From Chrysemys picta bellii (taxonomy: Eukaryota): a stretch of DNA of 63,845 nt. The stretch spans positions 23,188,001-23,251,845 of the forward strand of contig NC_088807.1 of NCBI RefSeq assembly GCF_011386835.1, read 5' to 3'. The position numbers were made by a program, and so were the translations under genes. Below the pieces are notes generated by a model that was not told the DNA's origin, searched no databases, and saw only the letters and a list, made by a program, of their open reading frames with translations. Shown here piece by piece: positions 4,356 to 62,908 of the stretch (position 1 is the stretch's first letter; each line of letters opens with the position of its first letter).

Positions 4356-6104
4356 TTGTGCTTTCGTTACAAGGTCGCATTTTTCCTCTTATATTGAGGG
4401 CCTGCTGGGTTGGTGTGAGAGATCATTTACGCAGTGCCAGGCAACAGATTTCGGCTTGCAGGCAGCCATGGTAAGCCACGGTCTTTTGGCTTTTTTAACC
4501 TTCTTAACATGTAGGAATGGTTTCAAACAGCAGCGCCCTCATTTCCCCTACCAAGCACCCGTTGGGTTGGCCATTTAAAATGGGTTTGCAATGTAAAAGG
4601 AGGGGCTGCGGTTCCTGGGTTAACATGCAGCACAAACCCAACTAACCCCCCTCCTCCCCCCAACACCCAATTCTCTGGGATGATCACTTCACCCCTCCCC
4701 CCCACCGCGTGGCTAACAGTGGGGAACATTTCTGTTCAGCCAAGCAGGAATGTCCCCTTAATAAAATCACCCCATTTCAACCAGGTGACCGTGAATGATA
4801 TCACTCTCCTGAGGATAACAAAGAGAGATAAGGAATGGATGTTGTCTGCATGCCAGCAAACACCGGGACCATACACTGCCATGCTTTGTTATGCAATGAT
4901 TCCAGACTACGTGCTACTGGCCTGGCACGGTAAAGTGTCCTACCATGGCGGACGGGATAAGGCAGCCCTCCCCAGAAACCTTTTGCAAAGGCTTTAGGGG
5001 TACATGAAGGAGAGCTTTCTGGAGATGTCCCTGGAAGATTTCCGCTCCATCCCCATACACGTTAAGAGACTTTTCCAGTAGCTGTACTGGCCGCGATTGC
5101 CAGGGCAAATCAATCATTAATCATTAAACACGCTTGCTTTTAAACCATGTGTAATATTTACAAAGGTACACTGACCAGAAGTCCCTTGTGTGCCCTCAGG
5201 GTCTGGGAGCATGCCTTGGGTGAGTTCGGGGGTTACCGGTTCCAGGGTGATAAACATATCCTGGCTGTTGGGGAAACCGGTTTCTCCGCTTCCTTGCTGT
5301 GATCTATCTTCATTGTCTTCATCATCATCTTCCTCGTACCCTGAACCCGCTTCCCGGTTGTGTGCTTCTCCACTGATGGAGTCAAAGCACATGGTTGGGG
5401 TAGTGGTGGCTGCACCCCCTAGCATCACATGCAGCTCCGCGTAGAAGCGGCAAGTTTGCGGCTCTGCCCCGGACCTTCCGTTTGCTTCTCTGGCTTTGTG
5501 GTAGGCTTGCCGTAGCTCCTTAATTTTCACGCGGCACTGCTGTGCGTCCCTGTTATGGTCTCTGTCCTTCGTGGCCTTTGAGACCTTTTCTAATATTTTG
5601 CCATTTCTTTTACTGCTACGGAGTTCAGCTAGCACTGATTCGTCTCCCCATATGGCGAGCAGATCCCGTACCTCCCGTTCGGTCCATGCTGGAACTCTTT
5701 TGCGATCCTGGGACTCCATCACGGTTACCTGTGCTGATGAGCTCTGCGTGGTCACCTGTGCTCTCCACGCTGGGCAAACAGGAAATGAAATTCAAACCTT
5801 CGCGGGTCTTTTCCTGTCTACCTGGTCAGTGCATCTGAGTTGAGAGTGCTGTCCAGAGCAGTCACCATGAAGCACTGTGGGATAGCTCCCGGAGGCCAAT
5901 AACGTCGAATTCCATCCACACTACCCCAAATCCGACCCGCAAAGGCCGATTTTAGCGCTAATCCCCTCGACGGAGGTGGAGTAAAGAAACCGGTTTAAAG
6001 GGCCCTTTAAGTCGAAAAAAAGGGCTTCGTCGTGTGGACGTGTCCAGGCTTAATTCGATTTAACGCTGCTAAATTCGACCTAAACTCGTAGTGTAGACCA
6101 GGCC
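4356..6104 (-). mobile_element. Harbinger/PIF transposon, truncated (one terminus plus Myb/SANT gene)
   Basis: Terminus GGCCTGGTCTACACTAC on minus strand at 6104; contains the Myb/SANT ORF; left end approximate. Confidence 0.75.
5117..5755 (-). CDS. Harbinger Myb/SANT-like DNA-binding protein ORF (first exon, TE-derived)
   Basis: 212-aa ORF: WTEREVRDLLAIW..QCRVKIKELRQAY..CRFYAELH trihelix/MADF pattern followed by an acidic tract. Confidence 0.8.
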   Translation of the reverse strand: MTTQSSSAQVTVMESQDRKRVPAWTEREVRDLLAIWGDESVLAELRSSKRNGKILEKVSKATKDRDHNRDAQQCRVKIKELRQAYHKAREANGRSGAEPQTCRFYAELHVMLGGAATTTPTMCFDSISGEAHNREAGSGYEEDDDEDNEDRSQQGSGETGFPNSQDMFITLEPVTPELTQGMLPDPEGTQGTSGQCTFVNITHGLKASVFND

Positions 6105-12001: not shown

Positions 12002-13007
12002 TGTCACGGAGTCACGGGGCGATGCTCTGGGACTGCTCCCTACGAAGCCAGGCAGGACTCGGGGGGGAGCCTCGTCTCTCGGCGCAGACTGTCCCCGGGC
12101 AAGAAGCTGCCACAGCTTCCACCGTCCTGGGTCTGACCCCGTTGCATTCAGCATCCCCGTCCCCCCGTGCGCGTCCCGCAGCGAGTCCATCCGGGGGGGG
12201 GGTGTCCTGGGGCAGCCAGAGGGTCTTGCCCCCCAACTCCGCAGTCAGACGTGACTCTCAGCCGGCCGGGAACACAGAAGGTTTATTAGCCGACAGGAAC
12301 AGCCCAAAAAGAGCTTGTGGGTACAGAGACCAGGACCCCTCAGTCTGGTCCATGTTGGGGCAGGGAGGCCAGAGTCCCATCTGGCCCCCCTCCATTTCCC
12401 CAGCCAGCTCCAAACTGACCCCCCCGCCCCAGCCCCTCCTCTGGCCTTTGTCTCTTTCCCAGGCCAGGAACCACCTGATCTCTTTGTTCTCCAACACCTT
12501 CAGTTGTCACTTGCAGGGGAGGGGCCCAGGCCACCGGTTACCAGGAGACAGGGCGTCAACCCTTCTCTGTGCAGACACCATCACATCACACCCCCTTATC
12601 CCACCACCTAGACACTTGAGAAATTGTGACGGAGCAGGGAGTGGGGCGGATTGGCCTGGGAATGTCTCTAGTTTTGCTGGGAGTGTCTGCATGGGGGATG
12701 GGAGAGCAGGAGGTGACTTCCCTTGAGCCAGGATCCCTGAGCCTGTAACCTGAGCTGGGAGGGGGGTTGGGCCACGTGACACCTTGCGCCCGGGAAATTG
12801 GACAAAGGTGTCACCTGGCCCCACCCGCCCTCCCGGCTCGGGTTACAGGCTCAGGTATCGTCGCCATGCAGACAGTCCCAGCAAAACTAGAGACATTCCC
12901 AGGTCAGTCCGCCCCGCTCCCTGCTCCGTCACAGAAATGCACAGGGGAAACTGAGGCACCAACACAGTATTCAGAGAAAAATGTAAGAACATGCCCACTT
13001 CGTCGCA
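12002..13007 (-). mobile_element. Solo LTR specific to FUT unit 1
   Basis: TG..CA termini; 5-bp TSD AGCCC (11997-12001, 13008-13012); empty site in the paralogous segment near 37410. Confidence 0.85.
12625..12933. mobile_element. 309-bp fold-back element with long TIRs
   Basis: TGTGACGGAGCAGGGAG..CTCCCTGCTCCGTCACA; arms complementary over most of their length; 5-bp TSD GAAAT (12620-12624, 12934-12938). Confidence 0.75.
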
Positions 13008-13329
13008 AGCCCCCTGCCCTGCTCCCCGCAGCCCAGCGCCCCCCGGTGCTACAATCTGGCATCGGGGCCAACTCTGACCCCTAGGGGAGAGCGCCTCCTG
13101 CTGGGATCCCCCTCTCCCTACACCCCAGCGCGCTGACACCCAGTGGCCACTTGGGACAGCGCGTGACACGTCCATACGTGCTGCCGCCTCCGTATTGTCC
13201 CAGCCGCCCCAGGCCCTCGGCCGCGCGGGGAGGAAAGCGACAGGCGAGGGCCTGGGAGAGCCCAGAGAGCTGAGAGCTGCCTGTGAGCAGATCCTCGGCT
13301 TTGTAACGGCCAGAGCCTGGAGAGCGAGG

Positions 13330-13860
13330 GATGGGGGTGTATGGGGCTAGCTAGGGGGGGCTATGGGGATAATGGGGGGGCTGTGGGGCTATGTAACGGC
13401 CAGAGCCTGGAGAGCGAGGGATGGGGGTGTATGGGGCTAGCTAGGGGCTATGGAGGTAGCTGGGGGCTATTGGGGTAGAGGGGCTATGGGGCTAGCTGGG
13501 GGGGCTATGGGGATAATGGGGGGGCTGTGGGGCTATGTAACGGCCAGAGCCTGGAGAGCGAGGGATGGGGGTGTATGGGGCTAGCCGGGGGCTATGGGAG
13601 TAGCTAGTGGGGGCTTTGAGGATAATGGGGGCTATGGGGGTAGCTAAACTGGGCTATGGGGCTATTGGGGTAGAGGGGCTATGGGGCTAGCTAGCGGACC
13701 CAAGGGGGGTAGATGGGAGTTATGGGGCTAGCTAGAAGGGGCTATGGGGAAAGATGGGGGCTATGGTGGTAGCTAGAGGGGGATATGGGGATCATGGGGG
13801 ACTATGGGGGTAGCTAACTGGGGGCTATCGGGGAATGTGGGGGGGTTATGGGGGTAACTA
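13330..13860. repeat. GGGGCTATGGGG degenerate minisatellite
   Basis: Direct reading; shorter paralog at 22425-22540. Confidence 0.8.
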
Positions 13861-15164: not shown

Positions 15165-15584
15165 TGTCTCTTGTAACAAAACCGCATTCGCAAAACAGCT
15201 CAGAGTCATAGTCCTGGCGCACCTCCACCGCCCCGGGCCAGCATCCCTGGTCCCCTGAACTCACCATGGGAACTGGGGAGCGAACCCCGGAGTCCTGGCT
15301 CCCAGCCCCCCCTACTCTAACCACTAGACCCCACATCCCTCCCAGAGCCAGGGAGAGAACCCAGGAGTCCTGGCTCCCAGCCCCCCTGCTCTAACCACTA
15401 GACCCCACTCCCCTCCCAGAGCCAGGGAGAGAACCCAGGAGTCCTGGCCCACATACACCATCACTCTGAACATTCCTATCAGATCACTAGCACTGATGTA
15501 GGTCACTGGCTTGGGAATCCCAGGTGACCAGTGCTGGGCAGACCGGCCATGCAACGGTGGGTGGATCTTGTTGGCTGAGCTCCT

Positions 15585-16619
15585 TTAGCCAGAATTCCCG
15601 CTCCGCAGTGGGGAGAGATCGGCGTTGATCCCGATCCACTCGGGCAGGAAGGCGGCCTCAGGTTTGAAGAGCTGGAGGAAGGGAGAATCGGGGAGGGTGT
15701 AGTTGGCCAAGTAGATGGTTTCCCCACCGACCAGGTAACCGGCCCAGATGCCGAAGGTCCCGATGGTCATGATCGTGTGGTTGCAATGGGCCAAGAGAGC
15801 AAAGTCCCTCCCCGGCGACGACTCCTTCCCGTCCCCCGAGAAATACACGTCCCCCCGCGAGGCGTCGATGTTCTCCCGGCACCACTCCATCCCGTTGCTG
15901 GTCACCACGAAGACCGGCTCCTGGTACTTGGCCCGGAAGTAGCCCATGGCCTTCTCCAGGTAGGCCTTGTCCGCCACCACCCCCTTCCATTTCTCAGTCA
16001 TTACCCGGACGTAGTCCCCCCTCCGGACGTGGACACCCACATAGGTCACGTTCTGGCGCTGCCCACGCAGCCCGGCAAGGTACCGGTTGGCCTCCTCCTT
16101 GACGTGGTCGTGGAAGGAGAATTCCTGGAGGATCTCCTGCCGGAGGTGGTGGTAGAAGGTCCAGGAGCAGGGGTAGCCTGTAAGCCAGACGTATTTCCCC
16201 TCGATGTGCCTGTACTCCTCCGACATCCAGTCATGGAGCTCATAGTCCTTCCATTGGATCCTCAAAGCCCTGAATCTGGAGAGCACGGGCAGGGTGATGC
16301 GGAAGAGCGGCGCCAGCTGCCGGTGCATCTCAGGGAGGATGTAGGCCTGGTGTCCGTTCATCTTGGCCAGGGCGTAGAGGGTGGCGTATTCCCCCATCTG
16401 GTTCCCAAGACGCCCGGCGGAGTTCACGGTCCACATGCCCCGCTCCTTGGAGGAGGCAGATAGACTCTGCCCTGGGTTATTGAGCGAGGGGTTCCTCCAC
16501 CCCAGGATGGGGAACTGGCTGTCCAGGCATAATAAGGCAGAGGCCATCAGGATAACCAGCAGGCAAAGGGTGATGAAGAGGGATGGCCGGCAAGAGACCC
16601 AGATGTCCATTAGCTTCAT
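15585..16619 (-). CDS. FUT2: Galactoside alpha-1,2-fucosyltransferase, FUT2-like, copy A (344 aa, GT11)
   Basis: N-terminal TM anchor, [39 protein letters not shown] motifs; single coding exon with acceptor 35 nt upstream of ATG (16654). Symbol marks closest similarity; strict orthology to FUT1/FUT2/SEC1 not established. Confidence 0.95.
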
Positions 16620-21990: not shown

Positions 21991-22751
21991 GGGGGACGGG
22001 TGCGATTTCTGGGTTGACGCAAAGTCCGGGGTGGAAAAGGGAGTTTGGGGCAGGACGAACTGGTGGAAATGTGGCCGGGGGCGGGATCAATATTGTGTCC
22101 AGGGACCCATCTCGTGCAATGCAACCCAGCGCCCCCAGGCGCCGCCCTTGGGACATTGAGGCCAGCTCTGACCCCTAGGGGAGAGCGCCTCCTGCTGGGA
22201 TCCCCCTCTCCCTACACCCCAGCGCGCTGACACCCAGTGGCCACTTGGGACAGCGCGTGACACGTCCACACGTGCTGCCACCTCCGTATTGTCCCAGCCG
22301 CCCCAGGCCCTCGGCCGCGCGGGGAGGAAAGCGACAGGCCGAGGGCCTGGGAGAGCCCAGAGAGCTGAGAGCTGCCTGTGAGCAGATCCATGGCTTTGTA
22401 ACGGCCAGAGCCTGGACAGGGAGGGATGGGGGTGTATGGGGCTAGCTAGGAGGGGCTATGGGGCTATCTGGGGGCTATGGGGCTATGGGGCTAGCTGGGG
22501 GGGCTATGGGGATAATTGGGGCCTATGGGGGTAGCTAGATCACAGATGACTGCAGGGAGTGGAGCTGGGTAGAGCTTGGAGACTTTGGCCACTAGGGGTC
22601 AGTGTCCCCCCCCCATGGGATCCCCAGCCGAAGTTACCAGCTGGAGTGTCCTGAACTCAGCTCCCCCGGGGTCAATCTGGGCTCACTCCCACCCCGGGAG
22701 GGGAATGGGGTCAGGGCTGGGCTGGGCTAGCAGGGGGCTGCGGGTCGAGCG

Positions 22752-24023: not shown

Positions 24024-24587
24024 AGCAGGGGGCGAGGACATGGCTCACCTGAGCGGTTCCGCGCCTGGCCAGGTCAACACAGAGCGATTTTATTTGTCTC
24101 TTATAACAAACCGCATTCGCAAAACAGCTCAGAGTCATAGTCCTGGCGCACCTCCACCACCCCGGGCCAGCATCCCTGGTCCCCTGAACTCACCACGGGA
24201 ACTGGGGAGCGAACCCCGAAGTCCTGGCTCCCAGCCCCCCCTGCTCTAACCACTAGACCCCACTCCCCTCCCAGAGCCAGGGAGAGAACACAGGAGTCCT
24301 GGCTCCCAGCCCCCCTGCTCTAACCACTAGACCCCACATCCCTCCCAGAGCCAGGGAGAGAGCCCAAGAGTCCTGGCTCCCAGCCCCCCTGCTCTAACCA
24401 CTAGACACCACTCCCCTCCCAGAGCCAGGGAGAGAACCCAGGAGTCCTGGCCCACATACACCATCACTCTGAACATTCCTATCAGATCACTAGCACTGAT
24501 GTAGGTCACTGGTTTGGGGATCCCAGGTGACGAGTGCTGGGCAGACCGGCCATGCAACGGTGGGTGGATCTTGTTGGCTGAGCTCCT

Positions 24588-25622
24588 TTAGCCAGAATTC
24601 CCACTCCGCAGTGGGGAGAGATCGGCATTGATCCCGATCCACTCGGGGAGGAAGGCGGCCGCAGGCTTGAAGATCTCAAGGAAGGGGGAATCGGGCAGGG
24701 TGTAGTTGGCCAAGTAGATGGTCTCCCCACCGACCAGGTAACCGGCCCAGATGCCGAAGGTCCCGATGGTCATGATCGTATGGTTGCAATGGGCCAAGAG
24801 AGCAAAGTCCTTCCCCGGCGACGACTCCTTCCCGTCCCCCGAGAAATACACGTCCCCACGCGAGGCTTCGATGTTCTCCCGGCACCACTCCATCCCGTTG
24901 CTGGTCACCACGAAGACCGGCTCCTGGTACTTGGCCCGGAAGTAGCCCATGGCCTTCTCCAAGTAGGCCTTGTCCGCCACCACCCCCTTCCAGTGCTCGG
25001 CCATCACCTGGACGTAATCCCCCCTCCGGACGTGGACGCCCACGTAGGTCACATTCTGGCGCTGCCCACGCAGCCCGGCCAGGTACCGGTTGGCCTCCTC
25101 CTTGACGTGGTCGTGGAAGGAGAATTCCTGGAGGATCTCCTGCCGGAGGTGGTGGTAGAAGGTCCAGGAGCAGGGGTAGCCCGTAAGCCAGACGTATTTC
25201 CCCTCGATGTGCCTGTACTCCTCCGACATCCAGTCATGGAGTTCGTAGTCCTTCCATGGGATCCTCGAAGCCCTGAATCTGGAGAGCACGGGCAGGGTGA
25301 TGCGGAAGAGCGGCGCCAGCTGCCGGTGCATCTCCGGGAGGATGTAGGCCTGGTGTCCGTTCATCTTGGCCAGGGCGTAGAGGGTGGCGTATTCCCCCAT
25401 CTGGTTCCCGAGACGCCCGGCAGAGTTAACGGTCCACATGCCCCGCTCCTTGGAGGAGGCAGATAGACTCTGCCCTGGGTTATTGAGCGAGGGGTTCCTC
25501 CACCCCAGGATGGGGAACTGGCTGTCCAGGCATAATAAGGCAGAGGCCATCAGGATAACCAGCAGGCAAAGGGTGATGAAGAGGGATGGCCGGCAAGAGA
25601 CCCAGATGTCCATTAGCTTCAT
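24588..25622 (-). CDS. FUT2: Galactoside alpha-1,2-fucosyltransferase, FUT2-like, copy B (344 aa, GT11)
   Basis: Same motifs as copy A; 10 aa differences; acceptor at 25657. Confidence 0.95.
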
Positions 25623-31730: not shown

Positions 31731-32571
31731 ACTGCCCCTGGGCCTGCCTAGCCCTGCCTGCCCCTCCCCGGCACTCTGGGGCTTGCCGGGCCAGGCAGGG
31801 AGGGTAGGGAATTAGGTGTGGGAGTAGGTCTCTGCATGAAATAGGTGAACCAGGACTCCTGGGTTCTCTCCCTGGCTCTGGGAAGGGAGTGGAGGGGGAG
31901 CTGGTAGCCAGGACTCCTGGGTTCTCTCCCTGGCTCTGGGAGGGGAGTGGGGTCTAGTGGTTAGAGCAGGCGGGGGGGGGGGGAGAGAGGAGCCCAAAGA
32001 TTGAACCCCTCCCCCCCTCCAGGGCTCAGAAGTGATGGATGTGTCATGCAGTGAAGGACTTGACAAGCCTGGACTGCCACATTTCCACCATCAAGATCCC
32101 CTAAGGGCCGGGCACCAACCCAAAAGGAAACAAATCAGGTACATTGAACTTTGCTCTTCAATCCTGACCTCAAGCCCCCTCCTCCCCTCCGCAGCTCTGC
32201 CGGTGCCCCTCACTCCCAGCCCGCAGCCCTCTGCTAGCCCAGCCCTGGGCTCCCCCCAGCCCTGCCAGCCCAGCCTGCCCCCCCACAGTGCCCCTGAATT
32301 CAGATTGTCAGCACAGAAAAGTGGAGGGAGGGCTGGGGGGAGCCCAGGGCTGGGCTAGCAGGGGGCTGCGGGTCGGGAGTGAGGGGCACCGGCAGGGCCG
32401 GGGAGGGGCAGAACTGGGCTAGCAGAGGCTGCGGGTCGGGAGTGAGGGGCACCGGCACAGCAGGATGGTGGGTCCCTAAGGGAACAGGTCAGAGGATCCT
32501 TCCTTAGCCGTTCTCTCTCTGTGTCCATTTTTGAGGGGTGGGGTAGATACTGACACAGTGTCCCACAGCCA

Positions 32572-33140
32572 GGGAGAGAACCCAGGAGTCTGGGCTCCCA
32601 GCTCCCTCCTCCCCCCCGCTCTAACCACTAGACCCCACTCCCCTCTCAGAGCCGAAGAGAGAACCCAGGAGTCCTGGCTCCCAGCCCCCCCCCACTCTAA
32701 CCACTAGACCCCACTCCCCTCTCAGAGCCCGGGAGAGAACCCAGGAGTCCTGGCTCCCAGCCCCCCCCCCCGCTCTAACCACTAGTCCCCACTCCCTTCT
32801 CTGAGCCCGGGAGAGAATCCAGGAGTCTTGGCTCCCAGGCCCCCCCTGCTCTAACCACTAGTTCCCACTCCCCTCCCAGAGCCAGGGAGAGAACCCAGGA
32901 GTCCTGTCTCCCAGCCCCTCATGCTCTAACCACTAGATCCCACTCCCCTCTCAGAGCCCAAGAGTCCTGGCTCCCAGCCCCCCCCCTCCACTGGAACCAC
33001 TACACCCCACTCCCCTCTCAGAGCCAAGGAGAGAACCCAGGAGTCCTGGCTCCCAGTCCCCCCCCCACTCTAACCACTAGACCCCACTCCCCTCTCAGAG
33101 CTGAGGAGAGAACCCAGGAGTCCTGGCTCCCAGCCCCCCT
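32572..33140 (+). repeat. ~70-75-bp CTAACCACTAGACCCCACTCCCC..GAGAACCCAGGAGTCCTGGCTCCCAG minisatellite
   Basis: About 8 tandem units; same unit also at 15290-15450, 24230-24450, 38447-38780, 39050-39500, 45280-45790 (reverse), 54625-55050, 56210-56330 (reverse), 62720-62890 (reverse). Confidence 0.9.
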
Positions 33141-35620: not shown

Positions 35621-36125
35621 ATGGAAGAAGGCATGTGGACTGTCAACTTCATCAGGCACCGGGGGAACATGCTGCCCTCTACGCCCTGCTCCCGGTGAAT
35701 GAGCCCCAGGCCTACATCCTCCCGGAGATGCACTGGGAGCTGGTGTCGCTCTGCCGCATCACCCTGCCCGTGCTCTCCAGCGACGTGGTCCAGAGGGTCC
35801 CAGGGGAAGACGACAGGCTCCACAACTGGATGTCAGAGAAGGACAGGTGCCTCCACAGCAGATAGGTCTGGCTCATGGGCTACCCCTGCTCCAGGACTTT
35901 CTACCTCCATCTCTGATAGGACAGCCTCCAGGAATTCTCCTTCCACAACCCCATCCAGGAAGAGGCCAACTGCTACCTGTCTGGGTTGCCAGCACGATCC
36001 ACCCACTCTAACTGGGCCAGTCAGCCTGGGATTGGATGCCTGGGATCCCCTGGCCAGGGTGGGTGGCATATGGAGAAGCCAATGACCTCAACTGGTCTTC
36101 TCATAGGAACTTCCAGAGCGATGGG
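35621..36125 (+). pseudogene. FUT2-like pseudogene
   Basis: [49 protein letters not shown]; deletion/frameshift in GNQMGEY, in-frame TAG and TGA-TAG, 5' and 3' ends lost; clear homology to ~35990, weak beyond. Confidence 0.9.
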
Positions 36126-36923: not shown

Positions 36924-36941
36924 CACTGCCCCCTAGTGGCC
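36924..36941 (-). promoter_or_regulatory. Single CTCF-consensus site
   Basis: GGCCACTAGGGGGCAGTG on minus strand. Confidence 0.5.
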
Positions 36942-37667
36942 AAAGTGACCCAGCTCCACCCCCTGCAGACATCTGTCATCTAGCTACCCCCATAGCCCCC
37001 CCAAATACCCCATAGCCCCCCAGCGAGCCCCATACACCCCCTTCTCTCGCTTTCCAGGCTCTGGCCGTTACAAAGGCGAGGATCTGCTCACAGGCAGCTC
37101 TCAGCTCTCTGGGCTCTCCCCTGTCGCTTTCCTCCCCGCGCGGCCGAGGGCCTGGGGCGGCTGGGACAATACGGAGGCGGCAGCACGTGTGGACGTGTCA
37201 CGCGCTGTCCCAAGTGGCCACTGGGTGTCAGCGCGCTGGGGTGTAGGGAGAGGGGGATCCCAGCAGGGGGCGCTCACCCCTAGGGTCAGGGCTGGCCCCC
37301 GTGCCCCGGTGTGGCACTAGGGGGCGTTGGGCTGCAGGGAGCGGGGGGAGTTCAGCAGGGGGCGCTGGGCTGTGGGGGCGGGGTGGGGGCTCTGCAGGGG
37401 GTGGGGCAGGGGGCTTGGCTGGGGGCCGTCTCCCCAGGCAGTCTGGGCTGGCCCCAATGCCCCAGGGCGGCGCTCGGGGGCGCTGGGCTGCATTGCACAT
37501 GATGGGTCCCTGGACTCACTTTTAATCCTGCCCCCGGCCGCATTTCCACCCGTTCGTCCTGCCCCAAAATCCCCCTTTTCCACCCCGGACTTTGCGTCAA
37601 GCCAGAAATCGCACCCCTCCCCCACAGAGACCAGGACACGCAGGGCAAGTTTGGCCCACACCAGCAG

Positions 37668-37673
37668 TTTATT
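37668..37673 (-). terminator. FGF21: FGF21 poly(A) signal; AU-rich elements upstream in the 3'UTR (37710-37840)
   Basis: AATAAA ~410 nt after the stop; several TATTTATT motifs on the minus strand. Confidence 0.7.
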
Positions 37674-38085: not shown

Positions 38086-38388
38086 TCAGAAGATGTAACT
38101 GGGGCTCAGAACCCGGGAGAGGCGACCCATCATGCTGAGGGGGTCGGAGGACTCCACGTCCAGCGGCGGGTCGCCGTAGAAGTCGTATTCCAGCAGGACG
38201 GGCTCCACCGGCACCCGGCTGACCATGGGCAGGAAGTGGAAGAGACGGGGGGCCGGGCGCCCCCGGCCGGGGTGCCCCTCCGCCGGCCGCAGGCTGACGG
38301 GGACGTTGTGGGTCTCGGAGAAGTAAAGGTTGTAACCATCACGCTGCACCTTCTCGCGGAAATTACAGGCCTCCTCCGAGTATGAGCT
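38086..38388 (-). CDS. FGF21: FGF21 exon 3
   Basis: EEACNFRE..DGYNLY..DPLSMMG..SPSY; acceptor CCCGCAG; phase 0. Confidence 0.95.
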   Translation of the reverse strand, partial: SSYSEEACNFREKVQRDGYNLYFSETHNVPVSLRPAEGHPGRGRPAPRLFHFLPMVSRVPVEPVLLEYDFYGDPPLDVESSDPLSMMGRLSRVLSPSYIF

Positions 38389-38905
38389 CTGCGGGGGAAG
38401 GAGATTACGGGGGCGCAGGTGAGCAGCTGTGTTTGAGGCCCCCATGCTCTAACCACTAGACCCCACTCCCTTCCCATAGCCCAGGAGAGAACCCAGGAGT
38501 CCTGGCTCCCAGCCTCCCCCGCTCTAACCACTAGACCCCACTCCCCTCCCAGAGCCCAGGAGAGAACCCAGGAGTCCTGGCTCCCAGCCATGCTCTAACC
38601 ACTAGACCCCACTCCCCTCCAAGAGCCCAGGAGAGAACCCAGGAGTCCTGGCTCCCAGCCCCCCTTGCTCTAACCACTGGACCCCACTCTCCTCCCAGAG
38701 CCTGGCAGAGAACCCAGGAGTCCTGGATCCCAGCCCACCCCCCCGCTCTAACCACAGGACCCCACTCTCCTCCCAGAGCCAGGATGGCAGGGAGGGGGAG
38801 CGATGCAGGGCTGGATGGGCCCTTTAGTTGGTTGTGTCCCCCTGTCCCGTCTAGCTAACCCCCCAGACACCCTCCCTGCCCCCCTGCTGCTGGGTTTCCA
38901 CTCAC

Positions 38906-39009
38906 CGCCCCATGCAGATGCCCACTGGGATCCATGCACAGGAACAGGAGCGTTTTCATTGCCTGAATCCGGATCACGCCAGGCTTCACCGCCTTAATCT
39001 CCATCAGAC
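38906..39009 (-). CDS. FGF21: FGF21 exon 2 (104 nt)
   Basis: LMEIKAVKPGVIRIQAMKTLLFLCMDPSGHLHGA; AG/GT flanks; phase 1 to 0. Confidence 0.95.
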
Positions 39010-39542
39010 CTGCAGCACCGGAGGCAGAGCGAAGTCAGCAAGGGAACCCAGGCGTCCGGGCTCCCAGACCCGCTCCTCTGCTCTAACCACTAGACCCCGC
39101 TCCCCTCCCAGAGCCGGGGAGAGAACCCAGGCGTCCTGGCTCCCAGACCCGCGCATCTGCTCTAACCACTAGACCCCACTCCCCTCCCAGAGCCGGGGAG
39201 AGAACTCAGGAGTCCTGTCTCCCGGCCCCCCCTGTTCTAACTACTAGACCCCGCTCCCCTCCCAGAGCCGGGGAGAGAACCCAGGAGTCCTAGCTCCCAG
39301 CTCCCCCTCCACTCCCCTTCCAGAGCCGGGGAGACAACCCAGGAGTCCTGGCTCCCAGCCCCCCCTGCTCTAACCACTGGACCCCACTCCGCTCCCAGAG
39401 CCGGGGAAAGAACCCAGGAGTCCTGGCTCCCAGCCCCCCCTGCTCTAACCACTAGACCCCACTCCCCTCCCAGAGCCAGGGAGAGAACCCAGGAGTCCTG
39501 GCTCGCCACCAGCCCCATCACCATCACCCCGCCGGTACTTAC

Positions 39543-39783
39543 TGTAGGGAGTCTGGTCGGGGGCCCCGCGCACCTCGCCCTGCGGGGTGATCTCCAGGTA
39601 CAGCTGCGTGTGGGCGTTGGCCGTGTACAGGTGTCGGAGCCGAACCTGCCCGTCAAACTGGTACAGGGGGCTGGAGTTCTGCAGGGGGGCGGCCTGGGAG
39701 GGCGCGGGGGGCCGGGTCCCCCACATCAGGGCAGCCAGCAGCAGCCAGGACTCTGCCGGGACAGGGGTCGAGCCACCCCACAT
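39543..39783 (-). CDS. FGF21: FGF21 exon 1
   Basis: Signal peptide then SSPLYQFDGQVRLRHLYT; donor A|GTAAGT; spliced product 215 aa. Confidence 0.92.
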
Positions 39784-40164: not shown

Positions 40165-40720
40165 CGGATCCCCAAGCCCCCATCCCCCCGGGGTCCCCAC
40201 GCCCCCATCTGCCCATCCAGGGTCCCCGTCCCCCCATCTGGGGTCCCCAACCCCCCATCTGGGGTCCCCAGCCCCTGGAGTCCCCAGCCCCCCGTCCCTC
40301 CCCCCCGGGGTCCCCAACCACCATCTGGGGTCCTCAGCCTCTAGAGTCCCCAGCCCCCCATCACTCCCCGGGGTCCCCAAACCCGCCATCTGGGGTCCCC
40401 AGCCTCTAGAGTCCCCAGCCCCCCATCCCTCCCCCCGGGGTCCCCAACCCCACATCTGGGGTCCCCAGCCTCTAGAGTCCCCAGCCCCCCGTCCCTCCCC
40501 CCGGGGTCCCCAACCCCCCATCTGGGGTCCCCAGCCTCTGGAGTCCCCAAGTCCCCTGTCCCTCCCCCCTGGGGTCCCCATTCCTCCAGGGTCCCTTGCA
40601 CTCCCGTTCTGCCGTCCTCCCAGGGTCACCAGCTCCCGCATCCCTCTGGGCTCCCCCCAAAGCCCCTCTCCAGGGTCTCCAGCCCCCCATGGTCTGCATC
40701 CCCTATTCCCTCCCTCCCTC
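40165..40720. repeat. GGGGTCCCCAGCC minisatellite
   Basis: Direct reading. Confidence 0.85.
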
Positions 40721-41184
40721 TGGGGTCCCCCAACACCCTAACACCCCCACCACGATCCCTCCCGGGTCTCCCGACACGCAGATGCCATCCACCACCATCC
40801 CTCCCCCATCCCCAGAAACCCCTGCTGCCAGCTCTCCATCCACACCGCCCCCCGCTGTTTTTTGGGGTTCACCCCCCGTCCCTGTTGGACCAGAGCTCTT
40901 TGGGGGAAGGGGAACATGGGGGTCCAATGGTCAGAGAATGGACGCGTGTGTCGGGGACCCAGGACGCCTGGGTTCTCCCCCTGGCTCGGGAGGGGGAAGA
41001 GGATCTAGTGGTTAGAGTTGGGGGAGGGGAGCAGCCAGAACCCCTGGGTTTGCGCATCACCCTCCCCTTTGCCCCAGTCGCTTACTCAGGCCCACGGCTG
41101 TGCCCAGCCTCGGGGCACGTGGGCACGATGATTTCATCCCCGGGGAATTGGGACTTTGGGCCCGAAAGTGCTCACCCAGAACAG

Positions 41185-42590
41185 GCCGGGCACCGCACTG
41201 AGTGTGTCCCTGGCGCCCCCTGCTGGAGGGGCCGGGCCCTGCGCTCTGTGTGTCCCTGGCGCCCCCTGCTGGAGGGGCCGGGCCCTGCGCTGTGTGTGTG
41301 TCCCTAGCGCCCCCTGCTGGAGGGGCCGGGCCCTGCGTTCTGTGTGTGTGTGTCCCCCTGGCGCCCCCTGCTGGAGGGGCCGGGCCCTGCGCTGTGTGTG
41401 TCCCTGGCGCCCCCTGCTGGAGGGGCCGGGCACCGCACTGAGTGTGTCCCTGGCGCCCCCTGCTGGAGGGGCCGAGCCCTGCGCTGTGTGTGTGTGTGTC
41501 CCTGGCGCCCCCTGCTGGAGGGGCCGGGCCCTGCGCTGTGTGTGTCCCTGGCGCCCCCTGCTGGAGGGGCCGGGCCCTGCGCTCTGGGTGTGTCCCTGGC
41601 GCCCCCTGCTGGAGGGGCCGGGCCCTGCGCTCTGGGTGTCCCTGGCGCCCCCTGCTGGAGGGGCTGGGCCCTGCGCTCTGGGTGTGTCCCTGGCGCCCCC
41701 TGCTGGAGGGGCCGGGCCCTGCGCTCTGGGTGTGTCCCTGGCGCCCCCTGCTGGAGGGGCCGGGCCCTGCGCTGGGTGTGTCCCCGGCGCCCCCTGCTGG
41801 AGGGGCCGGGCCCTGCGCTGTGTGTGTCCCTGGCGCCCCCTGCTGGAGGGGCCGGGCACCGCACTGAGTGTGTCCCTGGCGCCCCCTGCTGGAGGGACCG
41901 GGCCCTGCGCTGTGTGTGTGTCCCTGCGCCCCCTGCTGGAGGGGCCGGGCCCCGCGCTCTGTGTGTCCCTGGCGCCCCCTGCTGGAGGGGCCGGGCCCTG
42001 CGCTGTGTGTGTGTCCCTGGCCCCCCCTGCTGGAGGGGCCGGGCCCCGCGCTGTGTGTGTGTGTGTCCCTGGCGCCCCCTGCTGGAGGGGCCGGGCCCTG
42101 TGCTCTGTGTGTCCCTGGCGCCCCCTGCTGGAGGGGCCGGGCCCTGCGCTCTGTGTGTCCCTGGCGCCCCCTGCTGGAGGGGCCGGGCCGGCGCTGTGTG
42201 TGTGTCCCCCTGGCGCCCCCTGCTGGAGGGGCCGGGCCCCGCGCTGTGTGTGTCCCTGCGCCCCCTGCTGGAGGGGCCGGGCCCTGCGCTCTGTGTGTGT
42301 CCCTGGCGCCCCCTGCTGGAGGGGCCGGGCCCCGCGCTGTGTGTGTCCCTGCGCCCCCTGCTGGAGGGGCCGGGCCCTGCGCTGTGTGTGTGTCCCTGGC
42401 GCCCCCTGCTGGAGGGGCCGGGCCCTGCGCTCTGTGTGTGTGTGTGTCCCTGGCGCCCCCTGCTGGAGGGGCCGGGCCCCGCGCTGTGTGTGTGTCCCTG
42501 GCCCCCCCTGCTGGAGGGGCCGGGCCCTGCGCTCTGTGTGTGTCCCTGCGCCCCCTGCTGGAGGGGGCGGACCCTGCGCTGTGTGTGGGT
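41185..42590. repeat. ~48-bp tandem array (29 units) carrying GCGCCCCCTGCTGG
   Basis: Units counted by eye; 27 intact, 2 read GCCCCCCCTGCTGG; variable (TG)n spacer. Confidence 0.95.
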
Positions 42591-43059
42591 GTCAAAAGTA
42601 GCTACTCAGAACATCTGCAAACACCTCACAACATCCGGCCCCTGTGTACAGCTAACAGGATTAGTTTATTGTGGGGCGAGGGGGGTCTGGTGGTTGCGGG
42701 GGTGGGGGGGAGCTGGGAGCCAAGACTCCTGGGTCCTAGCCCTGGCTCTGGGAGGGGAGTGGGCTCTAGTGGGTTAGAGCCGGGGGGCTGGGAGCCCGGA
42801 CGCTTGGGTTCTCCTTGCCCACAAGCCCGGTCCGTGAGGTTCAGCTCCCTGGCTCTCAAAGTGTAAACAGAGCCGATGAAAATATAAATATTTGGCTTTG
42901 CCACATGACCAGGCAGCGAGCCGCCCAGTGGGGCAAAGGTCGGGCTACAGGGATGCGCCCGATTGTGCCCAGGTCCCAGGCCTGGCACGGGCAGTTCCCA
43001 TCCCCACCCGGCGCAAGTAGCACGGCTGGTGCGGCCTCCGTGGGCCCGATCCACCTTCC

Positions 43060-44200
43060 CCTTTGGGCATGTACCCAGGGCCCACCCCTGGCACTACGCG
43101 CCTCACGCCGGGTCCCGATGCCCCAGCCGTGCCACGCCCATTCCTGGCACTATGGGCCTCACACCGGGTCCCATTGCCCCAGCCATGCCATGCCTACCCC
43201 CGGCACTACAGGCCCCACACCAGGTCCCATTCCCCCAGCAGTCACCACCCCTGGCACTACACACCCCACGCCTGGTCCCATTGCCCCAGACATGCAGACC
43301 CCCGGCACTACATGCCCCATCCGTGCCATGCCCACCCCTGGCACTACGCACACCACACCGGGTGCCAACCCCCCAGCCGTGCCATACCCACCCCTGCTAC
43401 TACAGACCCCACATCGGGCCCCAACACCTCAGCTGTGCCCATCCCTGGCACTAGGAGCCCACGCCGGGTCCCATTGTCCCAGGCGTGCCCACCCCTGGCA
43501 CTATGGGTCCCACACTGGGTCCCAATGCCCCAGCTGTGCCGTGCCCACCTCTGGCACTATGTGCCCCACGCCGGGTCCCGACGCCCCAGCCATGCGATGC
43601 CCACCCCTGGCACTACAGACCTCACACCAGGTCCCATTGCCCCAGCCATGCCCACCCCCGGCACTACGGGCCCCACATTGGGTCCCATTGCCCCAGCCAT
43701 GCGCACCCCTGGCACTATGGGTCCCACACCGGGTCCCGACGCCCCATCCATGCCATGCCCACCCCTGGTACTACAGACCCCACAGTGGGTCCATTGCCCC
43801 AGCCGTGCCCACCCCTGGCACTATGCGCCCCACAGTGGGTCCCATTGCCCCAGCCATGCCCACCCCTGGCACTATGAGCCCTGCACGGGGTCCCATTGCC
43901 CCAACCGTGCCATGCCCACCCCTGGCACTATGGGCCCCATACCGGGTCCAGCCGCACCAGCTGTGATGTGCCCATCCCCGGCACTATGCGCCCTATGCCT
44001 GGTCCCATTGCCCCAGCCATGCCCACCCCTGGCACTATGCGCCCTATGCCGGGTCCCATTGCCCCAACCATGCCATGCCCACCCCTGGCACTATGGGCCC
44101 CATGCCGGGTCCAGCCGCACCAGCTGTGATGTGCCCACTCCTGGCACTACAGACCCCACACTGGGTCCGACACCCCAGCCGTGCCCACCCCTGGCACTAG
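43060..44200. repeat. ~40-55-bp CCCACCCCTGGCACTA..GGGTCCCATTGCCCCAGCC minisatellite
   Basis: Direct reading. Confidence 0.9.
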
Positions 44201-45020: not shown

Positions 45021-46164
45021 TCCAGCCTGTGGCCCCAGCCCCCTTCCCCCTCCCCCGCTTAGTACCCAGCTTCCCCCCTTCCCCGCCTAGTCCCCAGCTT
45101 CCCCCCCTCCCCCTCCCCCCCCCCCCCCCGCCCAGCTCTGGGAATGATGACTTGCAATTTCTATCTCATCCAAAAGGAATGTGCTGTCATGTGCCCTGCA
45201 GCTGGGGGGGGGGAGTGCGGGAGCTGTTTATAGGGGGGACCCCTTCACCCAGCGCTGAGAAACAGGGGCCTGGAGCCAGGATGCCTGGGTTCTCTCCTGG
45301 CTCGGGGAGGGGGGTCTAGTGGTTAGAGTGGGGGTGCTGGGGGCCAGGACGCCTAGGTTCTCTCCCTGACTGGGAGGGGAGTGGGCTCCAGTGGTTAGAG
45401 CAGGGGGGGCTGGGGGCCAGGACTCCTGGGTTCTCTCCTGGCTCTGGAAGGGGAGTGGGGTCCAGTGGTTAGAGCAGGGGCGGGCTGGGAGCCAGGACTC
45501 CTGGGTTCTCTCCTGGCGCTGGGACGGGAGTGGGGTCTAGTGGTTGGGGGGGTGGGGGCTGGAGGCCAGGACTCCAGGGTTCTCTCCCTGGCTTGGGAGG
45601 GGAGTGGGGTCTAGTGGTTGGGGGGGGGCTGGAGGCCAGGACTCCTGGGTTCTCTCCCTGGCTTGGGAGGGGAGTGGGGTCTAGTGGTTGGGGGGGGGGC
45701 TGGAGGCCAGGACTCCTGGGTTCTCTCCTAGCACTGGGACGGGAGTGGGGTCTAGTGGGTGGAGCAGGGGGCTGGGAGCCAGGACTCCTGGGTTCTCTTC
45801 CGGCTGCCACCGCGCCCAGCTCACGAGGAAACCAGTCACCCCCCATGATGACACCCTCCATCCATCCCAGATATCCGCCCCCCACACACACACAGCACGT
45901 TCCAGGATGCGCTTCCGATCCCCCGCATCCGAGCCTGCGTCAGGCCAGGGCTGGGTACAGCTGGCGGGGGCGAGGGGCTGATGGATGGCTTGGCCCGGCC
46001 TCCCCCCGCGCCAGGTGGCTCCGATCTAAATATTTACAGCCTTCCTGCCCCCAATTGGGGCTGATGTTGCGGTGGGGGGACAGGCAGCTGACCCTGGCCA
46101 CAGACCAGCAGGGCCAAGGGGGTGATGTAATAGGGGCAGTGGGCGCTGGGGGGCAGAGGGAACA

Positions 46165-46800
46165 AAGATAGAAATGGAAAATACCCATCAGTAAAAAGCG
46201 AGATGGAAAAAGTGAAAAAATCAAAAGAACGAGAGAACGAACGAAAAACTAGAAAAAAACAAATGAAAACCTGGGAAGAATGAATGAAAAAGTGGAAAGA
46301 ACAAATAGACAGCGAGGAAGAATTTATGAAACACTGGAAAGAACCAGAGACCGAATAAAAACGAGAAAAAACGAATGAAAAACCGGAAAGAGCAAATAAA
46401 AAGCGAGGAAGAATTTGTGAAATGCTACAAAGAACCAGAGACCGAATAAAAAATGAGGAAGAATGAATGAAAAACTGGGAAGACCAAGGGACTGAATGAG
46501 AAACGAGGAAGAAGAAAGAATAAACTACAGCGAACGAATAAAAAGGGGGAAGAATCCGTGAACCACTAGAAAGAGCCAGAGACCGAATGAAAACCTAGAC
46601 CGGACCCGAGAACACACGAAAAACTAGGAAAAATGAAACCTAGGAAGAAGGAATGGAGACAAAGAAAGACAGAAAGAGAAAACCGTGAAAGAAAGAGACA
46701 TTTGAAAGCTGAATGACAAAAGCGACAGGCAGGGGAGGGTCCCGGCCCGGTCCCGGCCCGAAGAAACAGAAGAATAAGACAAGACAAAAGAAAAGCTGGC
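46165..46800. repeat. A/G-rich low-complexity island with decayed ~85-90-bp repeats
   Basis: GAAAGAACCAGAGACCGAATAAAAA-like motif three times. Confidence 0.7.
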
Positions 46801-47374
46801 GGAGGGAGGCCAGGAGCGGTGGAGGGAAGGCGGCCGGCCCCAGCGAGCGGGGGTGTCCGATAGGGAAGTGGGGGGCTCCATCAGAAGAGAGGACCCCACA
46901 GCTCAGCCACCGGGGGAGAGGGGAAAGGCCCCACGCCCCATTCCCCACCCCCCTGAGCCAGCCAGTCCCTGCCCTGGGGCCGGATGGGAGCCGGCGCCCC
47001 CTAGAGGGGACAGGCCCCGCGCCCCATTCCCCACCCCCGGAGCCAGCCAGTCCCTGCCCTGGGCCCGGATGGGAGCCGGCGCCCCCTAGAGGGGAAAAGC
47101 CCCGTGTCCGTCCATCCCCCCCAGGGCCTGTTGGGAGGCATGGAGCTCTGGCTGGGCCCTGGGCAACAGGGGCTGAGTGATGCCGGGGGTGGGAGAGAAA
47201 TGGGGCAATGCCCCCCCCCCCACTGAGCTATGGGCCATCCCCTAACTCCCCCCTCAATCCTTTCCTCCAGCCCAGTTCCTCTCTAACCCCTCCTGCCTTA
47301 TGGTCATGGTTCCCATGCAGCACCCGGCACCATGGGGCCCTGATCTTGGTCCGGGAGGGGGGGGGGGGGGGATT

Positions 47375-62586: not shown

Positions 62587-62908
62587 CTGGGGACAGACTC
62601 CAGCTCAAGGGGCTCCTGAGATACACCCCCCCCCAAACTCCAGGCCCCCGGGGGGGAGGGGAGGTCACTCGCAATAGACCCAGCCCCCAAATGTCTGATC
62701 AGCATTGGCTAGAGGCACAGGACTCCTGGGTTCTCTCCCCTGCTCTGGGAAGGGAGTGGAGGCTATTGGTGGGAGGAAGGGGGCTGGGAGCCAGGACTCC
62801 TGGGTTCTCTCCCCCGGCTCTGAGAGGGGAGTGGGGGCTAGTGGTTAGAGCGGGGGGGTGGGGCTGGGAGCCAGGACTCCTGGGTTCTCTCTCTGATTCT
62901 GCCGGTAC

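What the first reader, a model, noticed from the sequence alone, without database searches (positions are those of the whole stretch)
41185..42590. Tandem array of ~29 co-oriented CTCF-consensus motifs just upstream of FGF21
Seen: each ~48-bp unit contains GCGCCCCCTGCTGG, i.e. CCAGCAGGGGGCGC on the minus strand; 27 of 29 units are intact, and the array starts ~1.1 kb beyond the FGF21 promoter, between it and the 3' end of BCAT2. Known: this matches the CTCF core CCASYAGRKGGCRS, CTCF binding is CpG-methylation sensitive, and CTCF repeat arrays (DXZ4, Firre, H19 ICR) act as strong boundaries. Inference: the array could be a copy-number-variable, methylation-switchable insulator or loop anchor gating access of BCAT2-side enhancers to a fasting/stress hormone gene.
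Basis: partly seen in the sequence, partly recalled or inferred. Interest (0 to 1): 0.75.

Follow-up and report, generated by a model that had tools for sequence, protein, structure and literature searches.

The report
CTCF-motif minisatellite upstream of turtle FGF21
A real 1.4-kb tandem repeat between the turtle BCAT2 and FGF21 genes carries 29 same-direction, near-perfect docking motifs for the genome-folding protein CTCF, but it is one of many such repeats in this genome and nothing yet shows that it is a purpose-built or methylation-switched insulator for FGF21.

Summary
Window 41185-42590 is a minisatellite of 29 head-to-tail units of 45-54 bp. All 29 score 14-21.5 of 26 bits on a CTCF matrix, all on the minus strand.

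The array lies 1.4 kb upstream of the start codon of a minus-strand endocrine FGF gene in the FGF21 position. It is about 6 kb downstream of the last recognised BCAT2 exon.

- Co-orientation follows automatically from tandem duplication.
- The motif's methylation-sensitive position 2 is CpA, not CpG, so an H19-type direct methylation switch is not built in.
- The upstream (zinc-finger 9-11) motif typical of insulator-grade sites is only a 6/10 match.
- The cohesin-blocking side of bound CTCF would face FGF21, not BCAT2.
- The array is not unique. Three of the 30 tandem arrays in this window have CTCF-grade consensus units (0.26 expected).

This scan has already noted similar CTCF-motif minisatellites elsewhere in this genome, on other DNA. 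Short-read contigs from four coded organisms cross one or both array edges, so close relatives share the array.

Most likely it is an ordinary GC-rich minisatellite that can bind several CTCF (or CTCFL) molecules when accessible. Occupancy and insulation are untested.

The parts
41185..42590 (-). Minisatellite of 29 units (45-54 bp). Read on the minus strand, each unit is a CTCF core (CCTCCAGCAGGGGGCGCCA), then GGG, a variable (CA)n run, a short variable segment and an almost invariant GC-rich tail.
   Evidence: TRF; unit table; PWM scores 14.3-21.5 bits, all minus strand; unit alignment
41185..41210 (-). Partial first unit carrying the variant GCACCGCACTGAGTG segment. The variant recurs in the units starting at 41405 and 41831, and may be the founder sequence copied again within the array.
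   Evidence: inference
40920..41050 (+). Copy of the abundant ~75-nt SINE-like element just left of the array
   Evidence: blastn self-hits; very high contig depth in bin 40884-40997
42675..42815 (+). Copy or copies of the same SINE-like element just right of the array, in the same orientation as the left one
   Evidence: blastn self-hits; very high contig depth in bin 42708-42821
39541..39783 (-). FGF21-position gene, coding exon 1 (ATG at 39783; GT donor after ...PDQTPYS)
   Evidence: reading of the translation. No Pfam hit for this exon alone.
38906..39009 (-). FGF21-position gene, coding exon 2 (approximate splice borders)
   Evidence: Pfam FGF E=5e-7
38086..38400 (-). FGF21-position gene, coding exon 3 with stop codon at 38086-38088 (acceptor not fixed)
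   Evidence: Pfam FGF; PDB hits to FGF19 and FGF21
37215..37367 (+). Cluster of four plus-strand CTCF-like motifs (12.5-17.5 bits), 150-450 bp beyond the FGF21 poly(A) signals and convergent with the array. It lies in a segment also present at about 13.0-13.4 kb and 22.1-22.6 kb.
48801..54733 (-). BCAT2 coding exons recognised in the window (N-terminal exon near 54.4-54.6 kb, penultimate exon 48801-48947); the 3' end faces the array

Best explanation
The feature is a GC-rich minisatellite. It grew by ordinary tandem duplication (unequal exchange or replication slippage, partly in two-unit blocks) of a ~46-bp founder that held a near-consensus CTCF core next to a (GT)n microsatellite. Each unit keeps a 19-21 bit CTCF core (two units 14.3 bits), so the 1.4-kb array is a very dense, one-directional platform of 29 potential docking sites. 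CTCF could use it in somatic cells, and CTCF with its paralogue CTCFL/BORIS could use it in testis. When accessible it would most likely be multiply occupied. It would then act as a local cohesin barrier or boundary between the BCAT2 and FGF21 transcription units, with the cohesin-stalling N-terminal (ZF3) side facing FGF21 and the FUT genes. It is one member of a class of CTCF-motif minisatellites in this turtle genome, not a device specific to FGF21. Direct CpG-methylation gating of the H19 type is unlikely, because motif position 2 is CpA. Shown here: the array, its motif strength, its orientation, its position, its presence in close relatives, and the excess of such arrays in this window. 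Inferred: CTCF binding, barrier activity and the direction of action.
For: Array anatomy and motif scores. Motif significance against iid and dinucleotide-shuffle nulls. In the window, 3 of 30 tandem arrays have CTCF-grade consensus units against 0.26 expected from shuffles, and all are on the minus strand. The first 14 motif columns are invariant in all 29 units, and the core 14-mer has only 2 variant cells. Substitutions and indels sit in the (CA)n run and the next ~10 nt. Two-unit (93-94 bp) blocks and clustered variants indicate growth by block duplication. Contigs from four coded organisms cross the left array edge, and three of them the right edge, with 0-4% differences in the left-edge contigs and up to about 6.5% in the right flank. 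Literature: tandem CTCF sites insulate (PMC7087399), closely spaced motifs are co-occupied by CTCF/BORIS multimers (PMC4562119), and the position-2 versus position-12 methylation rule holds in vitro.
Against: No occupancy, accessibility, methylation or contact data for any turtle tissue could be consulted. The upstream ZF9-11 motif that PMC12885311 links to insulator activity is only a 6/10 match. Sites spaced 46 bp apart may not all be occupied at once, and the array could equally be wrapped in about 7-8 nucleosomes (own reasoning). Blindly chosen best-conserved 19-mers in 15 non-CTCF arrays show core-versus-rest contrasts (-0.24 to 0.45) as large as those of the CTCF arrays (0.12-0.20). No motif-specific constraint is therefore demonstrated.
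Confidence: 0.5

Rival explanations
1. Neutral, unoccupied minisatellite. The CTCF-like core is a by-product of the sequence that happened to be amplified in a very GC-rich, repeat-dense region. The array is methylated and/or nucleosomal in vivo and has no architectural role.
For: The window holds about 30 tandem arrays in 64 kb at 61% GC overall and about 72% around the array. Units of this composition reach >=14 bits in about 3% of dinucleotide shuffles. CpG observed/expected of 0.44 equals the surroundings, which is compatible with germline methylation. There is no motif-specific constraint beyond what control arrays show. Co-orientation is automatic.
Against: A 21-bit match has a shuffle probability of about 0.1-0.2%. 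Three CTCF-grade arrays against 0.26 expected in this window, plus many further notes in this genome (unchecked leads), argue that the motif is not incidental. In mammals, strong consensus sites are usually occupied (own knowledge).
Confidence: 0.33
2. One reading: a copy-number-variable, CpG-methylation-switchable insulator that gates BCAT2-side enhancers away from the FGF21 promoter according to physiological state.
For: The position between BCAT2 and FGF21 is right. There are about 3 CpGs per unit, 92 in the array. Tandem CTCF sites insulate more strongly than single ones (PMC7087399; PMC12885311 cites dose effects).
Against: Motif position 2 is CpA, and the only core CpG is at position 12-13, where methylation does not inhibit binding in vitro. 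The ZF3/N-terminal side faces FGF21, the less effective orientation for blocking BCAT2-side enhancers according to PMC12885311. The upstream motif is poor. Similar arrays lie in BCAT2 introns and elsewhere, so there is no FGF21 specificity. Copy-number variation was not measurable.
Confidence: 0.08
3. The repeated core is used by another zinc-finger protein rather than by somatic CTCF. One candidate is ZIC-family factors, whose CCTGCTGGG-type motif (own memory, not tested) overlaps the core. Another is that the array is mainly a germline CTCFL/BORIS platform or a recombination-prone site.
For: The plus-strand core contains CCCCTGCTGGAGG, which resembles the ZIC consensus as remembered. Clustered CTCF motifs are the preferred BORIS targets and associate with promoters, enhancers and histone retention in sperm rather than with boundaries (PMC4562119).
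Against: The match extends over the full 19-bp CTCF matrix, including the GGCGC half that ZIC motifs lack. No ZIC or PRDM9 matrix was tested here.
Confidence: 0.09

Closest known systems
Tandem or clustered CTCF sites at mammalian boundaries (Pcdh, Igh, HoxD, beta-globin insertions; PMC7087399)
   Same: Several same-direction CTCF core motifs lie between genes. They are expected to add up in stalling cohesin and insulating.
   Different: The known clusters have a few to tens of sites spaced hundreds of bp to kb apart, in unique sequence. Here 29 sites are packed at 46-54 bp in a homogeneous minisatellite, and occupancy is unknown.
CTCF-binding macrosatellites and repeat loci DXZ4 and Firre (PMC3491370 and bioRxiv 10.1101/165340, listed, titles and abstracts only)
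   Same: A tandem repeat in which every unit brings a CTCF site. Orientation of the whole array matters for contacts at Dxz4.
   Different: DXZ4 units are about 3 kb, X-linked, and bound on the inactive X only. The turtle unit is about 46 bp, in a gene-dense region that is presumably autosomal, with no epigenetic data.
H19/Igf2 imprinting control region
   Same: Several CTCF sites between a gene and enhancers.
   Different: H19 ICR sites have a methylatable cytosine at motif position 2 (PMC8084297). The turtle motif has CpA there, so the defining switch is missing.
Clustered CTCF target sites (2xCTSes) bound by CTCF and BORIS (PMC4562119)
   Same: [quoted passage not shown] They allow homo- or heterodimeric occupancy.
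   Different: 2xCTSes are pairs in unique promoter or enhancer DNA. This is a 29-fold array, and BORIS binding in turtles is untested.
Other CTCF-motif minisatellites noted by this scan in the same genome (for example s1-322502, 82 x 48 bp; s1-318396, 45 x 47 bp; s1-322505, 20 x 48 bp)
   Same: Same organism, similar unit length (46-48 bp), near-perfect co-oriented CTCF cores, GC-rich gene-dense regions.
   Different: Within this window, the unit of this array shares only the core with the two BCAT2-intron arrays.

Membership tests
Vertebrate CTCF binding site (sequence definition) | Match to the 14-19 bp core bound by ZF3-7 (CCASYAGRKGGCRS; JASPAR MA0139.1) | tested here: met
   14/14 IUPAC positions in 27 units. 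PWM 19.1-21.5 bits of 26 in 27 units and 14.3 in 2. P=3e-8 to 2.5e-7 per 19-mer.
Vertebrate CTCF binding site (sequence definition) | Upstream 10-bp motif for ZF9-11 (CTGCAGTTCC-like), 2-7 bp from the core. It is present in about 13-15% of sites and in most insulator or barrier sites (PMC12885311). | tested here: inconclusive
   The best candidate, GCGCAGGGCC, lies 5-8 bp upstream of the core and matches 6/10, lacking the TT. This is not a near-ideal match. The feature is optional for binding.
Vertebrate CTCF binding site (functional definition) | CTCF occupancy in vivo (ChIP, CUT&RUN or footprint) | not testable with these tools
   No turtle CTCF data were reachable. The run search listed no holder on record as RNA, and the laid runs are contigs only.
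Methylation-switched CTCF insulator (H19 ICR type) | CpG at motif positions 2-3, so that methylation blocks ZF7 contact | tested here: not met
   The core reads C-C-A-G...; position 2-3 is CpA in all 29 units. The only core CpG is at 12-13, where methylation is neutral or slightly favourable.
Repeat-built CTCF boundary (DXZ4/Firre type) | Every repeat unit carries a CTCF motif, all in one orientation | tested here: met
   29 of 29 units, all on the minus strand.
Repeat-built CTCF boundary (DXZ4/Firre type) | Boundary or long-range contact anchor in Hi-C | not testable with these tools
   No contact maps were available.
Minisatellite / VNTR | Head-to-tail units of 10-100 bp with internal variants and block duplications | tested here: met
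   TRF period 46 x 29.1 and period 94. Variant units are clustered, with alternating two-unit blocks over roughly 42.2-42.4 kb.
Minisatellite / VNTR | Copy-number polymorphism between individuals | tested here: inconclusive
   Contigs from four coded organisms show small (GT)n and other indels inside the array (for example at 42091 and 42291) and ambiguous 'goes back 615' joints. Short-read contigs cannot size the array.
Clustered CTCF target sites (2xCTS; CTCF and BORIS) | Two or more CTCF motifs too close to resolve by ChIP | tested here: met
   Centre-to-centre spacing is 45-54 bp. BORIS or CTCF co-occupancy itself is not testable.
Endocrine FGF (FGF19/21/23 subfamily), FGF21 orthologue | FGF beta-trefoil domain, a C-terminal tail of the FGF19/21 type, and synteny with BCAT2, FUT genes and HSD17B14 | tested here: met
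   Pfam FGF on exons 2 and 3. PDB best hits are FGF19 (E=4e-16, including the tail) and FGF21 (E=2e-7; those chains lack the tail). BCAT2 and two GT11 FUT genes are confirmed in the window. HSD17B14 rests only on an unchecked scan note. The choice of FGF21 over FGF19 rests on synteny and on the remembered DPLSM...SPSY tail, so it is inferred. Exons were searched separately and never joined.

The most novel reading that the evidence does not exclude
Turtles (at least emydids) may have evolved a class of ultra-dense CTCF-site minisatellites that serve as strong one-directional chromatin barriers in GC-rich, gene-dense, microchromosome-like regions. On this reading the present array, convergent with the plus-strand CTCF cluster just 3' of FGF21, would enclose the stress-hormone gene in its own mini-domain. 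It would also shield the gene from read-through or enhancers of the neighbouring housekeeping gene BCAT2.
Probability: 0.12. Interest if true: 0.7.

Novelty: new member of a known kind. Interest (0 to 1): 0.35.

Why it matters
If the array is occupied, it would be among the densest natural CTCF platforms described: 29 sites in 1.4 kb, next to a tightly regulated metabolic hormone gene. It would also give a simple natural test of how the number and spacing of CTCF sites scale with insulation.

The wider value lies less in this locus than in the class. An excess of minisatellites built on CTCF cores in one reptile genome raises a question of cause. CTCF binding might promote tandem expansion, for example through breaks or fork stalling at bound sites. 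Alternatively, selection might retain such arrays as boundaries.

As it stands, the locus is a well-documented candidate. It is not a demonstrated regulator of FGF21.

Tried and rejected
1. Homology between arrays. I looked for similarity between this unit and the other CTCF-motif arrays or lone sites in the window. Similarity does not extend convincingly beyond the core, whereas the two BCAT2-intron arrays do resemble each other. A single transposon-derived origin for all of them is therefore not supported.

2. Motif-specific constraint inside the arrays. A first comparison looked striking: motif identity 0.93 and 0.82 against 0.60 and 0.52 for the rest of the unit. A blind control on 15 non-CTCF arrays gave equally large contrasts, so I dropped this as evidence of selection.

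3. CpG-island reading. Rejected, because CpG observed/expected is 0.44, the same as the surroundings.

4. Coding reading. The 514-codon open frame across the array on the minus strand is a by-product of a stop-free repeat, and I did not pursue it.

5. Structured RNA. Rfam found nothing in the whole window.

6. 'Skips about 1764' joints in the laid contigs (40976 to 42741 and similar). I read these as other genomic copies of the flanking SINE-like element (sides of only 19-27 letters), not as array-deletion alleles.

7. Contig depth over the array as a copy-number estimate. The tool states that depth is not a copy number, so I did not use it.

8. Searches that gave nothing useful. The search of earlier findings by sequence was blank. 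The protein atlas could not separate FGF21 from other FGFs. The Hashimoto 2017 paper is not held, so I cited reviews that report its result. Literature searches found no paper on CTCF-motif minisatellites in turtles or on CTCF control of FGF21.

9. Steps not taken. I left the N runs untouched. I took no contig for human DNA.

Full report
**The observation**

Window 41185-42590 is a tandem array. Tandem Repeats Finder gives period 46, 29.1 copies, 89% matches and score 2098. It also reports a 94-bp period, which reflects two-unit blocks.

Cutting the sequence at the motif yields 29 units, with spacings of 45-54 bp and a mode of 46. Almost all length variation lies in a (GT)n run. The two exceptions (units 18 and 28) share a G>C change at the motif's CpG.

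On the minus strand each unit starts CCTCCAGCAGGGGGCGCCA. This satisfies all 14 positions of CCASYAGRKGGCRS.

Of a possible 26 bits:
- 21 units score 21.2 bits
- one scores 21.5 and one 20.6
- four score 19.1
- two score 14.3

There is no plus-strand hit inside the array.

Such a score has P = 3e-8 per 19-mer under a uniform background and 2.5e-7 under 72% GC. Dinucleotide shuffles of the unit reach >=19 bits in 0.2% of 5000 trials and >=14 bits in 2.9%. The chance rate is still not negligible for a genome holding thousands of GC-rich repeats.

**Gene context**

An endocrine FGF gene lies on the minus strand.
- Exon 1 has its ATG at 39783 and a GT donor near 39541.
- Exon 2 lies at about 38.9-39.0 kb.
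- Exon 3 ends with a stop codon at 38086-38088.
- Poly(A) signals lie at 37673 and 37526.

Exons 2 and 3 hit Pfam FGF. Exon 3 aligns to human FGF19 (E = 4e-16, tail included) and to FGF21 (E = 2e-7, truncated chains).

I call it FGF21 because of the neighbours and because of the tail motifs DPLSM...SPSY as I remember them. That assignment is inferred. The neighbours are BCAT2, two GT11 fucosyltransferase genes and HSD17B14 (scan note only, unchecked). The exons were searched one by one by reference and were never joined.

BCAT2 also runs on the minus strand, from about 54.7 kb down to a penultimate exon at 48801-48947. The order on the minus strand is therefore BCAT2, then about 6 kb of repeats, then the array, then 1.4 kb, then FGF21. 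The transcription start site is unmapped, so '1.1 kb from the promoter' is approximate.

**How the array is built**

The alignment of units shows:
- The first 14 motif columns are invariant.
- There are only two variant cells in the core 14-mer.
- The GC-rich tail is nearly invariant.
- Most variation lies in the (CA)n run and the following ~10 nt.

Variant units are clustered (the units starting at 41549-41739), and two-unit blocks alternate over roughly 42.2-42.4 kb. A variant identical to the partial first unit recurs at 41405 and 41831. This is the signature of a minisatellite growing by block duplication.

Co-orientation of the motifs is an automatic result of that process and carries no evidential weight. 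CpG observed/expected is 0.44, against 0.36-0.42 in the flanks and 0.41 window-wide, so the array is not a CpG island. Both flanks carry a copy of an abundant ~75-nt SINE-like element.

**Presence in other genomes**

Contigs from four coded organisms were laid on 40200-43600.
- Left edge: all four cross from the left flank into the array (40887-41213, 40959-41213 and 41002-41253 with 0-1 differences; 40954-41201 with 10).
- Right edge: three of the four cross it (42551-42772, 42548-42734, 42551-42696).
- The fourth organism is about 4% different in its left-edge contig and up to about 6.5% in the right flank.

The array therefore sits at this site in several close relatives. Its size there, and any copy-number polymorphism, cannot be read from contigs. 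No RNA evidence was obtained.

**The array is not unique**

I ran TRF over the window and kept 30 non-overlapping arrays. Three have consensus units at >=14 bits: this one, 50.5 kb (61 bp, 18.5 bits) and 52.5 kb (54-61 bp, 23.2 bits). Shuffles predict 0.26. All three are on the minus strand.

Weaker two- to four-copy cases lie at 46992/47077 and 62363/62412. This array's unit shares only the core with the BCAT2-intron arrays.

This scan's notebook lists 33 CTCF-related notes for the same genome. Several describe 47-48-bp arrays of 20-82 units. These are unchecked leads, but they agree with what I see inside this window.

I tested whether the motif is more constrained than the rest of the unit. 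The blindly chosen best-conserved 19-mer overlaps the CTCF core in all three arrays. However, the size of the core-versus-rest contrast is matched by non-CTCF control arrays. Selection on the motif is therefore not shown.

**The proposed mechanism**

*What fits.* A 19-21 bit core is the kind of site that is usually bound (own knowledge). CTCF's DNA-binding fingers are highly conserved among vertebrates (own knowledge). Tandem sites insulate (PMC7087399). Closely spaced motifs are co-occupied by CTCF or BORIS multimers (PMC4562119).

- Methylation. It inhibits CTCF at motif position 2 but not at position 12 (PMC8084297, PMC11514455). Here position 2-3 is CpA and the only core CpG is at 12-13. 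PMC6600276 uses this reasoning to predict methylation-insensitive binding at a subtelomeric site. Indirect occlusion by methylated, nucleosomal chromatin remains possible.
- Upstream motif. Insulator-grade sites typically carry an upstream CTGCAGTTCC-like motif, and the unit offers only a 6/10 match.
- Orientation. The motif's 3' (ZF3/N-terminal) side points to lower coordinates, towards FGF21 and the FUT genes. PMC12885311 reports stronger blocking when that side faces the enhancer. The array would then better contain activity on the FGF21/FUT side than keep BCAT2-side enhancers out. PMC7087399 finds insulation orientation-independent, so this point is soft.

One suggestive detail is a cluster of four plus-strand motifs (12.5-17.5 bits) at 37215-37367. 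It lies 150-450 bp beyond the FGF21 poly(A) signals and is convergent with the array. That segment is a duplicated 3' flank of FUT genes, and a 23.9-bit minus-strand site lies right next to it at 36924.

**Verdict**

The thing is a minisatellite whose unit is a near-consensus CTCF site. It is shared with close relatives and is one of a class in this genome.

My best reading (about 0.5) is a dense CTCF/CTCFL docking platform with some boundary activity between BCAT2 and FGF21. A neutral, unoccupied repeat is the main rival (about 0.33). The methylation-switch insulator specific to FGF21 is unlikely (about 0.08).

It is a new member of a known kind (tandem CTCF-site arrays), already seen repeatedly by this scan in this genome. 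Interest is moderate.

Noticed in passing
window 50467-50838 and 52252-52765 (minus strand): Two minisatellites in BCAT2 introns (61-bp and 54-61-bp units). Their units also carry CTCF cores of 14-24 bits, all minus strand. The two resemble each other beyond the core but not the FGF21-upstream array.
   Followed up: partly
window 37000-37500 (+), 13000-13400 (-), 22100-22620 (-): A segment of about 400-500 bp present three times (79-89% identity), about 2.2 kb downstream of each FUT coding region. It carries two to four CTCF-like motifs. The copy at 37.2-37.35 kb is convergent with the array across FGF21.
   Followed up: partly
window 36924 (minus), 52252 (minus), 22586 (plus): Strongest single CTCF matrix hits in the window (23.9, 23.7 and 20.5 bits). 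Window-wide, hits at >=12 bits are 58 on the minus strand against 8 on the plus strand, mostly because of the arrays.
   Followed up: no
window 15585-16619 (-), 24588-25622 (-), 35644-36021 (+): Two intact, 97% identical GT11 (alpha-1,2-fucosyltransferase) genes about 9 kb apart. A third, diverged FUT-like stretch (52% identity) lies on the opposite strand, tail-to-tail with FGF21.
   Followed up: partly
window 38439-38784, 39044-39504, 45275-45805, 54645-55022, 32567-33139, 24205-24451, 15276-15448, 62718-62891: A ~75-nt SINE-like unit (containing ...CTAGTGGTTAGAG...) occurs as short tandem arrays of 2-7 copies at many places, including both FGF21 introns and both flanks of the CTCF array. 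Contig depth shows it is extremely abundant genome-wide.
   Followed up: no
window 5117-5755 (-): A 212-codon open frame with a Myb/SANT-like (Myb_DNA-bind_4 / MADF) domain, E = 1e-16. It may be a domesticated or transposon-derived gene.
   Followed up: no
window 38089-38448 (-): The last exon of the FGF21-position gene aligns better to human FGF19 than to human FGF21 over the shared core (50 against 35 bits). This suggests the turtle gene is closer to the ancestral FGF19/21 form.
   Followed up: partly
window 46000-46900: An A/G-rich low-complexity stretch (GC about 0.45 amid 0.7 surroundings, AT skew +0.33) with 91-141-bp tandem periods, between the repeat field and the BCAT2 3' end.
   Followed up: no
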